64,000 nucleotides of DNA, taken from the sequence record NC_016163.1. The stretch is one strand, 5' to 3'. The position numbers and the translations under genes were made by a program. Shown here in pieces: positions 32,410 to 46,986 of this stretch (the first letter of the stretch is position 1; every line of letters begins with the position of its first letter). The notes under the pieces are model-generated. The model was given only the letters and a program-made list of their open reading frames with translations, had not been told where the DNA came from and searched no databases.

Positions 32410-32525
32410 AACTACCCTATACCTTCTTCGGAGGGTATAGGGTTCATTCTTTTTTTTTTGTAACTGTAGGCTTAATATACATATATAATTACGATGATCT
32501 CTGACTAAGTAAAGGATTTTTAATC

Positions 32526-32921
32526 ATGATCGACAAAAAAGAAATGGTTAAACTAGTAGTAGAGTTCAATTTAAGACATGGATATTTACTACATGGTGCC
32601 AGTATGGTTATGCATGGAGTAAAAGATCAAACTAATGACATTGATATACTTATTCATGCTAAATATATCGACCGTCTTGAATTTTCAAGTAAAAAAGCTC
32701 AGAAATTCGATTTTGGATTTGGTAGTGTAAGAAATACCATTGATTATGTGCTGATTGATGGTTTTCAGTGTCAAACTCTTGAAAGTATTATTAAAGAGAA
32801 AAGGCAACTTGGTAGACCTAAAGATCTAGAAGCTATCGAGTTAATCGAAGCTTTTATAGCTAAAGGTAATCTGCCAAAATCCTATCAATCTATATACCGT
32901 AAAGTCGTAATGGACTACTAA
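32526..32921 (+). CDS. minimal nucleotidyltransferase-like protein
   Basis: HGASMVMHG...TNDIDI (G-S, DxD) and K..LGRPKD motifs. Confidence 0.65.
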   Translation: MIDKKEMVKLVVEFNLRHGYLLHGASMVMHGVKDQTNDIDILIHAKYIDRLEFSSKKAQKFDFGFGSVRNTIDYVLIDGFQCQTLESIIKEKRQLGRPKDLEAIELIEAFIAKGNLPKSYQSIYRKVVMDY

Positions 32922-32965
32922 TTAACCCTTATACCTTCTTTGGAGGGTATAAGGGAAGTTTTTTA

Positions 32966-33077
32966 GAAAAAAGTCCCCATAACTAGGGAAACAAAGCGGA
33001 GCAAAAACCTAGTTATGGGGTCAGAGGAGTAGTAATACACATGGAGAGTAAGCCGAGTGACTCGATCTTAATTTTCT
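32966..33077 (-). ncRNA. candidate late small RNA of about 110 nt
   Basis: Minus-strand AACA-N6-TA at 33088-33077, no sizeable ORF, 13-bp perfect stem (32975-87 / 33008-20) followed by U6. Confidence 0.5.
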
Positions 33078-33224
33078 ATTTTAATGTTAGTATGAAAAAA
33101 TTTTCTCTTTGTAGCAATAAAGTATATTAAAATATTTCTATGTTTTCGTAACTGTATATACATTATTGATATATTATTTTAGTGTTAGTAAATAAAAATA
33201 ATCATACAGACTAGGAGAATTACC

Positions 33225-33767
33225 ATGAATACATCTATTTCTACTGAAATCATGAATGCATTCAATACAAATGTACGTGTATATTGCCGTCGTTTAGAAA
33301 TTGCAGAATTGGCTCCATACTTCATTGAGAATGAAGAAGCTCGTTCATCCATTACACGTATTGCAAAGACCTTTGGCTATGATCTGAATAATAAAGATCA
33401 TCTTGGTCGAACTGCAGCTTTTACTGTTGCTACAATTATCAAACTCAAGGCTATGCAAGAAGATACGCCTGAAGGAATGGTAATGATTAGTAAGGAAAAC
33501 TGTATTAAAGTTGCTTCTGTAGCTATAAATATCTTTCATTCAATCAATAAAGATTTTAATGAAGATGGGAATGCAATTAATATCAAGAAAGCGAGACTAA
33601 ACTTTGTCGGAACATTGCTTACTAAAGGTATTAATTATTCCGATGAAAATCTTGATTTAGCTGAAGGGTTTGTAAGAACTTATTTTACTAACCGTAATCA
33701 AGATAAATCCAGTGTAACTGCTACAGTTCTCAATCAAGCTCGTAATGGGAATGATTGGGAGGCATAA
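33225..33767 (+). CDS. hypothetical early protein (monocistronic)
   Basis: Early motif at 33169, AGGAG SD, terminator at about 33766-33792. Confidence 0.85.
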   Translation: MNTSISTEIMNAFNTNVRVYCRRLEIAELAPYFIENEEARSSITRIAKTFGYDLNNKDHLGRTAAFTVATIIKLKAMQEDTPEGMVMISKENCIKVASVAINIFHSINKDFNEDGNAINIKKARLNFVGTLLTKGINYSDENLDLAEGFVRTYFTNRNQDKSSVTATVLNQARNGNDWEA

Positions 33768-36822: not shown

Positions 36823-36916
36823 GGTATGACTTTCCTATTCGATTAGTATACTAATTTGATGTTCCATCAACATTCATTTAGTAACGTTTATATTAAATTA
36901 AAAAACGGATCAAATT

Positions 36917-45612: not shown

Positions 45613-46986
45613 ATGGAAATCATCAACACAGCGATGAACGCATTAAATACTGCTACGTCATTTGTATCAGGTGTTTCAAACTCCAATACTGGTAAAAGTT
45701 TTGCGGTTGGTGATAACCCTTACTCAAATCTTTACAATGACTCTGCAGGATTTATTTTTGGTAAGCCTTTAGCATTTAATCCTAAAGCTGACCCAAACCA
45801 AAGAGTATTCCAAAGAACCCTCTTAAGAAATGATACTATTGTAAACTTTGTTCCGGGCGTACCATATACAAACCAAAGTATGGTGGATCAGGCTAATACA
45901 ATACTAACTGCACATAGAGAGAAATTAGATATTCTTCTAAACTCTCCGGTTCCTGATGAGAGAGCCATAGCTAATCTTTGTCAAGATACTCAAGATGCTT
46001 TATTATCTCAGCAGTGTGATTTACGTTATTACACTTTTAAACAAGATGTAGCAGGTTTCTTAAGAGCCTTACAGATAATGGTTAACCGAGTAGGCACCTC
46101 TGTATTCGGCTGGAATCAAGGTGTTTCTGGATTCGTATCTGACTTAGTAGCATCTAATGTATCTGAAGATATGATGCTACGTGGATTTAAAGTATGGGTT
46201 GATAAAGCTACCTCTATCTCTGAATCAGTAGATAACAGTTTTACTCAGTCGGTATTAGAAAGTACTCAAAAGAGTATATCTAGTGCAGTTAAACAAGCTA
46301 GATTCTTAGGTGGTGCTGCTAATATAGCTGGCATGAATGCTGAATCAGTAGTCAAATCTTCTGATGCAAATCTTGAAGCAGTTGGTAATATGAACGAATT
46401 AGCAAGCCGTACATTAGCTGGTTCTTCCTTCCAATTCCCCCAAGTATTTGATGATAGTAAATTCTCCAGAAGCTATGAGCTATACTTCAGATTTATGTCA
46501 CCATATGGTGATGATAGAAGTGTATTCTATCATGTATTATTTCCATTCTTAGCAATGCTAACTGCAGCATTACCTAGACAAGATAATATCTCCGGCTATA
46601 CCTCTCCATTCATTATGCAAGTCGATGCTCCCGGATACTTTAGTTGTCCTATGGGTGTAGTAACAGCACTGTCTTTCATCAAAGGCGGCGATGAGAAGTT
46701 ATTCAATAATAGAGGTTTACCGTTAATTATTGAAGGTACATTATCTATTCAAGATTTGTACTCTAACTTAAGCCTACCTTTAAGTTTTGATCAGTTTGCT
46801 ACAAACTTAGGTACTTCCGCTTTCCTTAGTAATATGGGTGGTATGAGCCTTTATTCAGTTATGGATGTTAGTGCAAGAAACTATGTACAGAACTGGTCTA
46901 AAGATACATTGACTAAATTCATTCAACCATATAACTGGATGAATGAAGAATCCCTTAAAGTTCGTCGTTATTTCGGTCTTTATTAA
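45613..46986 (+). CDS. probable baseplate/tail-tube junction protein
   Basis: Position in the tail module; C-terminal FP.VF..SKF.RSY...F.F.SPYGD...P..MQV pattern reminiscent of gp48/54-type proteins. Confidence 0.45.
   Translation: MEIINTAMNALNTATSFVSGVSNSNTGKSFAVGDNPYSNLYNDSAGFIFGKPLAFNPKADPNQRVFQRTLLRNDTIVNFVPGVPYTNQSMVDQANTILTAHREKLDILLNSPVPDERAIANLCQDTQDALLSQQCDLRYYTFKQDVAGFLRALQIMVNRVGTSVFGWNQGVSGFVSDLVASNVSEDMMLRGFKVWVDKATSISESVDNSFTQSVLESTQKSISSAVKQARFLGGAANIAGMNAESVVKSSDANLEAVGNMNELASRTLAGSSFQFPQVFDDSKFSRSYELYFRFMSPYGDDRSVFYHVLFPFLAMLTAALPRQDNISGYTSPFIMQVDAPGYFSCPMGVVTALSFIKGGDEKLFNNRGLPLIIEGTLSIQDLYSNLSLPLSFDQFATNLGTSAFLSNMGGMSLYSVMDVSARNYVQNWSKDTLTKFIQPYNWMNEESLKVRRYFGLY

What the first reader, a model, noticed from the sequence alone, without database searches (positions are those of the whole stretch)
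32966..33088. Candidate late sRNA with three anti-Shine-Dalgarno CUCC motifs
Seen: a minus-strand late promoter (AACATTAAAATAG, identical over 13 nt to the one at 46985), then about 110 nt without a real ORF, ending in a perfect 13-bp stem plus U6. The RNA would display CUUACUCUCCAU, UACUCCUCU and a loop GCUCCGC, all complementary to GGAG ribosome-binding sites. The segment is GC-richer than the other spacers. Inference: a translation-silencing sRNA, for example for late shut-off of early mRNAs. If the plus strand is transcribed instead, its four GGA motifs could sponge CsrA/RsmA. It is also a candidate trans RNA for the RT.
Basis: partly seen in the sequence, partly recalled or inferred. Interest (0 to 1): 0.65.

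Follow-up and report, generated by a model that had tools for sequence, protein, structure and literature searches.

The report
Conserved small late RNA gene, phage phiR1-37
The giant Yersinia phage phiR1-37 carries, in a spacer annotated as empty, a conserved gene-like unit (late phage promoter, about 110 non-coding bases, strong terminator) that probably makes a small regulatory RNA, but the RNA has not yet been seen and its target is unknown.

Summary
The window is Yersinia jumbo phage phiR1-37, with coordinates identical to AJ972879.2.

- **Promoter.** The minus-strand motif AACATTAAAATAG (33088-33076) fits the late-promoter consensus of the sister phage AR9. In phiR1-37, AACA-N6-TAG occurs 69 times. 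Of these, 55 lie just upstream of genes in the sense orientation, including virion structural genes. About 4 intergenic hits are expected by chance.
- **Orphan status.** Only three hits precede no called ORF. One is this site; the other two lie in the tRNA/ncRNA island.
- **Conservation.** In metagenomic relatives, the block from the promoter to the U-run is 93-99% identical. The adjacent spacer is about 70% identical and g078 about 72%. The conserved block starts and ends at the promoter and the terminator.
- **Coding potential.** No reading frame on either strand is conserved.
- **Known families.** Nothing in Rfam matches.

I read it as a real, unannotated, non-coding late transcription unit (about 0.7).

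The proposed anti-Shine-Dalgarno function remains an inference (about 0.3). GGAG-type ribosome sites are 8.7-fold enriched (odds ratio) at early-promoter genes, which fits the idea. However, no conserved target was found, and the best candidate (g216) failed the conservation test. The CsrA-sponge, small-protein and RT-template readings are not supported. Strand-specific expression could not be checked, because the public runs were available only as contigs.

The parts
33076..33088 (-). Late (non-virion RNA polymerase type) promoter AACATTAAAATAG = AACA-N6-TAG. The predicted start is the A at 33077.
   Evidence: It matches the AR9 late consensus AACA-N6-TA/G, whose last base is the start site (PMC5312081). 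Of 69 genome hits, 55 are sense-upstream of genes, against 4.2 intergenic hits expected. It is invariant in relatives except one change inside N6 in L020 that keeps AACA and TAG. Conservation begins exactly at T-AACA.
32967..33077 (-). Predicted non-coding RNA of about 108-111 nt
   Evidence: No conserved ORF on either strand. No Rfam family. 93-99% identical in relatives, against about 70% for the adjacent spacer. No substitution between 32962 and 33100 in two natural variants.
33049..33070 (-). 5' stem-loop: 9 pairs, one bulged A, 3-nt loop
   Evidence: MFE and alignment consensus fold agree. Relatives change a loop base and turn U.G into U-A. One relative loses the outermost pair. There is no two-sided covariation.
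33021..33048 (-). Single-stranded CU-rich stretch. CUCUCCAUG is invariant. The middle is variable (GUGU to AC; ACUACUCC to ACUUACCCC(C)). CCUCU is invariant.
   Evidence: Unpaired in the MFE and centroid folds. Variation pattern from alignments A1 and A2.
32975..33020 (-). Terminator hairpin: perfect 13-bp stem and 20-nt loop containing GCUCCGC
   Evidence: Fold. 100% invariant, loop included, in all nine sequences. No other copy in the genome.
32967..32972 (-). U-run (U6 here; about 6-12 U in relatives), the 3' end of the RNA
   Evidence: Its length varies between natural variants (insertions at 32958).
32926..32955 (+). Context: the plus-strand terminator of g077, tail to tail with the RNA's terminator
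   Evidence: Annotated in AJ972879.2 and found by the scan. It is a repeated terminator module.
33165..33189 (+). Context: the early promoter of g078, divergent from the RNA gene. It shares a 16-nt segment with the late promoter region.
   Evidence: Annotated, and listed as verified by RNA-seq; g078 is EARLY with very high read counts. Sequence comparison.

Best explanation
The segment is a stand-alone, non-coding transcription unit on the minus strand of phiR1-37.

How it is made (inferred). The phage's non-virion RNA polymerase would start at an AR9-type late promoter (AACA-N6-TAG, +1 = A33077). It would stop at a 13-bp hairpin plus U-run near 32967-32970. The product would be an RNA of about 110 nt with three parts: a 5' stem-loop, an unpaired CU-rich stretch of 28 nt, and a terminator hairpin with a large invariant loop.

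Shown here, in silico: the promoter class, the terminator, the absence of coding constraint, and selective conservation of exactly this block.

Inferred only: that the RNA accumulates, that it appears after the early phase, and what it does.

Most likely mechanism (about 0.3). It is a trans-acting base-pairing regulator. Its invariant CUCUCCAUG and CCUCU motifs, and perhaps the loop GCUCCGC, would pair with GGAG/GAGG ribosome-binding sites. Those sites are typical of early-promoter genes and rare at late-promoter genes.

Next most likely: a protein-binding or decoy role for the invariant 20-nt loop.
For: - Promoter. AACA-N6-TAG has 69 genome hits: 55 sense-upstream of genes, 10 inside genes in sense, 1 antisense, 3 orphan. 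Observed in intergenic DNA 51, expected 4.2. The motif precedes virion structural genes g045, g048, g081/g082, g134 and g135. AR9, the closest relative with dU-DNA, uses AACA-N6-TA/G for late genes. AR9 non-virion polymerase is partially active on phiR1-37 DNA (PMC5449584).
- Terminator and fold.
- Conservation. There are no substitutions between 32962 and 33100 in two natural variants, against 12-14 substitutions in the next 64 nt. In more distant relatives the RNA is 93-94% identical, the promoter 10-11 of 11, the spacer 70%, the g078 coding sequence 72% and the g079 coding sequence 91-94%. The gene upstream differs between relatives, yet the RNA unit is kept.
- Non-coding.
- No sigma-70-like promoter on the minus strand here.
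- Function hint: GGAG/GAGG in 15/34 early-promoter-proximal genes against 5/60 late-promoter-proximal genes, Fisher p = 1e-4.
Against: - No transcript has been seen. The published RNA-seq lists ten new RNAs but none here; its nearest is misc_3 at 32,500-32,820 on the minus strand.
- The public runs could only be laid as contigs, which give no strand, ends or level.
- About two chance AACA-N6-TAG hits per orientation are expected across all spacers, so the motif alone is not proof.
- There is no compensatory base-pair change, because the sequences are too similar.
- The middle of the putative seed is the least conserved part of the RNA.
- No conserved target was found. The g216 match is lost in relatives, and the g078 ribosome site ranks 58 of 332.
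- Pairing energies do not differ between early and late genes.
Confidence: 0.68

Rival explanations
1. The promoter is real, but the functional product is a longer antisense RNA. Transcription from 33077 would read through the hairpin into the upstream gene, and the published misc_3 asRNA (32,820-32,500) would be its distal part. The conserved 110 nt would then be a leader or processing signal.
For: misc_3 lies on the same strand, 146 nt downstream of the U-run. No AACA-type promoter with one mismatch or fewer lies between 32,700 and 32,970 on the minus strand to start misc_3.
Against: The upstream gene is different in relatives (131-aa g077, a 232-aa gene, or a 101-aa gene), while the small unit is conserved. 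An antisense role against g077 therefore cannot explain the conservation. The terminator is strong (13 bp plus 6 or more U). misc_3 was not reported as extending to 32,966.
Confidence: 0.1
2. It is a DNA-level or terminator-only element. The hairpin would be a back-stop terminator or insulator for stray minus-strand transcription across g078, or a protein-binding site. The AACA-N6-TAG match would be a chance hit or a remnant of a duplicated g078 promoter.
For: About 2 chance hits per orientation are expected genome-wide. The late-promoter region shares 15 of 16 nt with the start-site region of the g078 early promoter read on the other strand, which suggests a duplication. It stands tail to tail with the g077 terminator.
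Against: Conservation covers the whole 60 nt between promoter and hairpin and stops at the AACA, not at the hairpin. The one promoter substitution seen falls in N6. An invariant 20-nt loop is not needed for termination.
Confidence: 0.1
3. The plus strand is the functional one. It would be either the 29-aa ORF 33041-33130 behind a GAGGAG ribosome site, or a GGA-rich CsrA/RsmA-binding 3' extension of the g077 mRNA.
For: The ORF exists with a GAGGAG 11 nt upstream. In the closest variant three of the four changes within the ORF are synonymous, and the stop is kept as TAA to TGA. The plus-strand fold is also stable, z = -4.2. There are four GGA motifs, one of them in the hairpin loop.
Against: ORF length is 17, 29 or 42 codons in relatives, and all five substitutions in codons 1-17 are non-synonymous while synonymous sites are frozen. 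No plus-strand promoter serves it: the early-type motif here has 3 mismatches in the core ATATATTAT, and the AR9 virion polymerase is described as highly sensitive to deviations from its consensus (PMC5312081). The g077 terminator lies upstream, and no U-run follows the hairpin on the plus strand. One GGA is lost in the L012/L020 lineage (GAGGAG to GAGGGG).
Confidence: 0.05
4. It is the template or partner RNA of the phage reverse transcriptase at 54.1-56.3 kb.
For: None beyond both being in the same genome.
Against: It lies 21 kb away. No retron-like inverted repeats flank it. An earlier follow-up of this scan (s1-157043, not re-tested here) places that RT near template-independent polymerases. 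The RT gene sits behind an early-type promoter motif, while this RNA sits behind a late one.
Confidence: 0.02

Closest known systems
AR9 / PBS2 late transcription units (non-virion multisubunit RNA polymerase, promoter AACA-N6-TA/G on dU-DNA)
   Same: The promoter core and spacing are the same. phiR1-37 is AR9's closest relative and also has dU-DNA. In AR9 some late promoters drive antisense or non-coding RNA, and one late gene is a tRNA (PMC5312081).
   Different: phiR1-37 adds a near-obligatory G after the TA (47 of 59 sense-upstream hits are TAG). In the papers read here the late consensus of phiR1-37 was reported as not found. No AR9 counterpart of this RNA is known.
Enterobacterial trans-acting (Hfq-type) small RNAs
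   Same: Size near 100 nt, its own promoter, a 5' stem-loop, an unpaired stretch, and a Rho-independent terminator with 6 or more U.
   Different: It would be made by a phage polymerase in a lytic jumbo phage. The centre of the unpaired stretch is the least conserved part. No target, Hfq binding or transcript has been shown.
C/U-rich anti-Shine-Dalgarno regulators (for example RsaE/RoxS and RNAIII of Firmicutes; CyaR loop in enterobacteria). From my own knowledge.
   Same: Several C/U-rich motifs in unpaired regions or loops that could pair with ribosome-binding sites of many mRNAs.
   Different: There is no sequence relationship (Rfam negative). Multi-target pairing here is only a hypothesis.
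Phage-encoded small RNAs: phiR1-37 misc_1-10 (Leskinen 2016), lambda OOP, P1 C4, P22 Sar, DicF
   Same: Short phage transcripts ending in intrinsic terminators and thought to control translation or stability of mRNAs.
   Different: It is not among the ten RNAs reported for phiR1-37. It is not antisense to any gene, unlike OOP, Sar and nine of the ten misc RNAs. It has no repeats or processing signals like C4.

Membership tests
AR9-type late (non-virion RNAP) promoter | AACA at -11 to -8, six free bases, then T and A/G, with the last base as the start site | tested here: met
   AACA-TTAAAA-TAG at 33088-33076. Consensus from PMC5312081.
AR9-type late (non-virion RNAP) promoter | The motif is actually used as a promoter class in this phage | tested here: met
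   In silico only. 55 of 69 hits are sense-upstream of genes, 51 are intergenic against 4.2 expected, and the motif lies before virion structural genes.
AR9-type late (non-virion RNAP) promoter | A mapped 5'-triphosphate start and late kinetics | not testable with these tools
   Only contigs of the RNA-seq runs could be laid. The published temporal classes are coarse.
Trans-acting base-pairing sRNA | Own promoter plus a Rho-independent terminator with a U-tail, and non-coding | tested here: met
Trans-acting base-pairing sRNA | A discrete, accumulating transcript | not testable with these tools
   Not in Table 1 of PMC4848604. The RNA was column-purified with no small-RNA library, so absence there is weak evidence.
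Trans-acting base-pairing sRNA | A conserved single-stranded seed | tested here: inconclusive
   CUCUCCAUG and CCUCU are invariant, but the 14 nt between them vary, with indels.
Trans-acting base-pairing sRNA | Complementary target site conserved or co-varying in relatives | tested here: not met
   The best site, 12 nt at the g216 ribosome site, drops to 6-8 nt in relatives from the same samples that keep the seed. The g078 site is unremarkable.
Any Rfam family | Score at or above the gathering threshold | tested here: not met
   No hit at gathering threshold in the window. The best sub-threshold hit is 20.9 bits against a threshold of 63.
Small protein gene (plus ORF 33041-33130) | Conserved length and excess of synonymous change | tested here: not met
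   17, 29 or 42 codons; 5 non-synonymous and 0 synonymous changes in codons 1-17.
CsrB/RsmZ-type CsrA sponge | Many GGA motifs in loops of a transcribed RNA with its own promoter and terminator | tested here: not met
   Four GGA on the plus strand, one of them in a loop. There is no plus-strand promoter or terminator for the segment. One GGA is lost in L012/L020.
Retron or RT-associated ncRNA | Adjacent to the RT gene, with flanking inverted repeats | tested here: not met
   The RT lies at 54.1-56.3 kb. The only inverted repeat here is the terminator.

The most novel reading that the evidence does not exclude
A jumbo phage that transcribes with its own polymerases also times translation with an RNA. 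The late-made ~110-nt RNA, displaying several anti-GGAG motifs, would selectively silence the GGAG-type early mRNAs, while late mRNAs with AAGGA-type sites escape. That would be a global early-to-late translational switch encoded as one small RNA.
Probability: 0.12. Interest if true: 0.8.

Novelty: new member of a known kind. Interest (0 to 1): 0.5.

Why it matters
Trans-acting small RNAs of strictly lytic phages, and of jumbo phages in particular, are almost unexplored. This candidate is small, sharply delimited and conserved, and it sits in a cultivable phage-host pair with published transcriptomics. One Northern blot and one promoter mutant would settle whether it exists.

The supporting analysis also gives phiR1-37 a late-promoter consensus, AACA-N6-TAG. 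The AR9 paper read here (PMC5312081, 2017) says the phiR1-37 transcriptome study failed to provide one. It also shows that early-promoter and late-promoter genes use different types of ribosome-binding site. That contrast is the premise a temporal translational regulator would need.

Tried and rejected
- **tRNA/tmRNA and Rfam:** no hits.
- **Relatives in GenBank phages and IMG/VR:** none for g078, and only distant g077 homologues without synteny. A loop pattern in viral contigs gave 0 hits. In metagenome contigs it gave 5 hits in unrelated sequence context, taken as chance.
- **Expression:** the infection RNA-seq runs hold the whole region in one 22.5-kb contig, which says nothing about strand, ends or level. 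No raw reads were available.
- **Plus-strand early promoter reading of the motif:** 19 of 25 identity to the g078 promoter, but 3 mismatches in the core ATATATTAT. Rejected.
- **Second minus-strand AACA motifs at 33186 and 33144:** they end in TAA and TAT rather than TAG. Rejected as promoters.
- **Targets:**
  - g216 ribosome site: 12 nt, not conserved.
  - g244 start codon (11 nt) and g243: these pair with the variable part of the RNA and are at chance level genome-wide.
  - g078: ribosome site ranks 58 of 332.
  - Early against late pairing energies: not significant.
  - Single-stranded region against shuffles: 5 of 60 shuffles were as good.
- **Covariation:** none available; 0 two-sided changes.
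- **Minus-strand ORFs (9-aa AUG, 25-aa GUG):** start and frame are not conserved.
- **Host-target search:** not attempted, because no host genome handle was at hand and short exact patterns would be uninformative.

Full report
**Identity of the window.** The window is Yersinia phage phiR1-37, a 262-kb jumbo phage with dU-containing DNA. Its coordinates equal those of AJ972879.2. The finding lies in the 303-nt spacer between g077 (+, 32526-32921) and g078 (+, 33225-33767). The record annotates only two things there: a plus-strand terminator (32926-32955) and the g078 promoter (33165-33189). g078 is one of the most abundant early transcripts.

**Observation.**
- AACATTAAAATAG lies on the minus strand at 33088-33076. 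The same 13-mer occurs at 46985 (+), before g086, and at 84830 (+), before structural gene g135.
- About 110 nt follow without a conserved ORF.
- A perfect 13-bp stem with a 20-nt loop comes next, followed by AC and U6.
- The three CU-rich motifs are there. In the minimum-free-energy fold, two lie in a 28-nt unpaired stretch and one lies in the terminator loop.
- GC content is 0.39, against 0.27 +/- 0.05 for other spacers.

**Which strand does the promoter serve?** The motif read on the plus strand resembles the annotated A/U-rich early promoter of g078, with 19 of 25 positions identical. However, it has three mismatches in the core ATATATTAT. The AR9 paper describes the virion polymerase of that related phage as highly sensitive to deviations from its consensus (PMC5312081).

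Read on the minus strand, the motif is a perfect match to the AR9 late consensus AACA-N6-TA/G, whose last base is the start site. AR9 is described there as the closest relative of phiR1-37, and no late consensus had been obtained for phiR1-37.

I tested the motif genome-wide.
- AACA-N6-T[AG] hits that lie upstream of genes in sense almost all read TAG.
- AACA-N6-TAG occurs 69 times: 55 intergenic and sense-upstream of a gene, 10 inside genes in sense, 1 antisense, and 3 with no called ORF downstream.
- Dinucleotide shuffles of the spacers give 4.2 +/- 2.0 hits, against 51 observed.
- The motif precedes virion structural genes g045, g048, g081/g082, g134 and g135. This fits a late class.
- AR9 non-virion polymerase is partially active on phiR1-37 DNA (PMC5449584).
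- The three orphan hits are this site and two in the tRNA/ncRNA island at 71-72 kb. That fits late promoters driving RNA genes.

**Conservation.** GenBank phages and IMG/VR hold no relative. A word search with g078 found metagenomic relatives with 90, 68, 67, 65 and 63% protein identity. Their contigs were fetched.

In the alignment (A1), the block from T-AACA to the U-run is nearly invariant. Sequence immediately upstream of the promoter diverges freely. Identity to phiR1-37 in the three distant lineages:

| Segment | Identity |
|---|---|
| RNA | 93-94% |
| Late promoter | 10-11 of 11 |
| Adjacent spacer | 70-71% |
| g078 coding sequence | 72-73% |
| g079 (prohead protease) | 91-94% (L011, L012; only part of g079 lies on the short L020 contig) |

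- The only promoter substitution, in L020, lies in N6 and keeps AACA and TAG.
- The terminator hairpin, including its 20-nt loop, is identical in all nine sequences.
- Two closer natural variants, seen by laying contigs of public runs, have no substitution between 32962 and 33100. They have 12-14 substitutions in the next 64 nt.
- The gene upstream of the unit is not the same in all relatives: 131 aa, 232 aa or 101 aa. The unit is therefore not an appendage of g077.

**Not coding.**
- The plus ORF 33041-33130 is 29, 17 or 42 codons long in different lineages. All five substitutions in its first 17 codons are non-synonymous, while synonymous positions are frozen.
- The short minus-strand frames change start and frame through indels.

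Conservation is therefore at the nucleotide level.

**Structure.** The single-sequence fold and the alignment fold agree. From 5' to 3' the parts are a 5' stem-loop (33070-33049), an unpaired stretch (33048-33021) and the terminator (33020-32975). With so little divergence there is no two-sided covariation. One U.G becomes U-A, one loop base changes, and one lineage loses the outermost pair of the 5' stem.

**Expression.** The published RNA-seq reports ten new RNAs, none at this site. The nearest, misc_3, lies on the same strand at 32,500-32,820. RNA was prepared on silica columns, and no small-RNA library is described. From my own knowledge, this disfavours 110-nt species, although a 5S peak was visible on their Bioanalyzer traces. 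The public runs of that study could only be laid as contigs. A single 22.5-kb contig covers the region, which is uninformative on strand and ends. Expression therefore remains untested.

**Function.** I looked for targets in several ways.
- *Exact complementarity in the phage genome.* The best case at a ribosome-binding site is a 12-nt match to the invariant UUACUCUCCAUG at g216. In relatives from the very samples that supplied RNA variants with the same seed, the g216 site keeps only 6-8 nt. I reject it as a conserved target.
- *Other matches.* Those at g243 and g244 involve the variable part of the RNA and are at chance level.
- *The neighbour.* The g078 ribosome site ranks 58 of 332.
- *The unpaired stretch overall.* It pairs with translation-initiation regions slightly better than with internal coding controls (-9.1 against -7.4 kcal/mol). 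It also beats most shuffles, but 5 of 60 were as good.
- *Ribosome-site type.* GGAG or GAGG occurs in the ribosome-site region of 15 of 34 genes that follow early promoters. It occurs in only 5 of 60 genes that follow late promoters (odds ratio 8.7, p = 1e-4).
- *Early against late pairing energies.* They do not differ.

The mechanism is therefore plausible but unproven. The invariant 20-nt loop points equally to a protein partner.

**Rivals.**
- A read-through antisense RNA (misc_3) is possible. It cannot explain conservation of the unit next to different upstream genes. No AACA-type promoter explains the start of misc_3 either.
- A terminator-only or DNA-level element does not explain the conserved 60 nt between promoter and hairpin.
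- The plus-strand readings (peptide, CsrA sponge) and the RT-template idea fail their defining tests; see the membership table.

**Comparison and novelty.** The unit works like a classical small RNA gene, but with a jumbo-phage late promoter. It belongs to no Rfam family and has no reported counterpart in AR9 or among the phiR1-37 RNAs already described. I class it as a new member of a known kind. Probability that a discrete late RNA is made is about 0.7. Probability that it acts by anti-Shine-Dalgarno pairing is about 0.3.

**Limits.** All relatives belong to one shallow clade. Gene calls for the genome-wide statistics are my own simple ORF calls, not the curated annotation. Promoter use and timing are inferred from sequence and from AR9.

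Noticed in passing
window 11504, 13766, 36863(-)/36869(+), 45168, 46985, 53484(-)/53520(+), 61679(-), 63463; whole genome: phiR1-37 has a clear late-promoter consensus, AACA-N6-TAG. There are 55 sense-upstream hits, and 51 intergenic hits against 4.2 expected. The AR9 paper read here (PMC5312081) reports that the phiR1-37 transcriptome study gave no late consensus.
   Followed up: partly
window 36863-36881: Back-to-back AACA-N6-TAG motifs face g081 and g082. Table S2 of Leskinen 2016 lists divergent 'Sigma promoters' in this gap. Those may really be phage late promoters.
   Followed up: no
genome-wide: Ribosome-binding sites differ by promoter class. GGAG/GAGG occurs in 15/34 genes behind early promoters and 5/60 behind late promoters. 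Late genes mostly use AAGG/AGGA.
   Followed up: partly
window 32414-32443 and 32926-32955; L011, L012, L015 upstream of the RNA: The terminators of g076 and g077 are near-identical copies of a repeated hairpin module found elsewhere in the genome. Assemblies break at it. The gene between the module and the small RNA is swapped among relatives (131-aa g077, a 232-aa gene, a 101-aa gene), which suggests cassette exchange at repeated terminators.
   Followed up: partly
window 33129-33149: An island of invariant bases (TACG..A.CATAGAAAT on the minus strand) lies inside the otherwise fast-evolving spacer, 35-55 nt upstream of the g078 early start site. It may be an upstream element of that very strong early promoter.
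   Followed up: no
window 33076-33092 and 33174-33190: The late-promoter region of the RNA and the start-site region of the g078 early promoter share 15 of 16 nt (TACTAACA[T/C]TAAAATA on the minus strand). This suggests a local duplication. The second copy ends in TAA rather than TAG.
   Followed up: partly
window 32500-32820 (-): The published antisense RNA misc_3 has no AACA-type promoter within 150 nt of its reported start. It could be read-through or processing of transcription that starts at 33077.
   Followed up: partly
G000:C1:71138 and 72051 (outside the window): The only other orphan AACA-N6-TAG promoters lie in the ORF-free tRNA/ncRNA island. This agrees with earlier notes of this scan that the island's RNAs sit under late promoters.
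   Followed up: no
runs X6-X20; loci L011-L020: phiR1-37-like phages, with no relative in GenBank phages, are present in several public metatranscriptomes and metagenomes at 2-30% divergence. g078 evolves much faster (63-90% aa identity) than the neighbouring prohead protease gene.
   Followed up: partly
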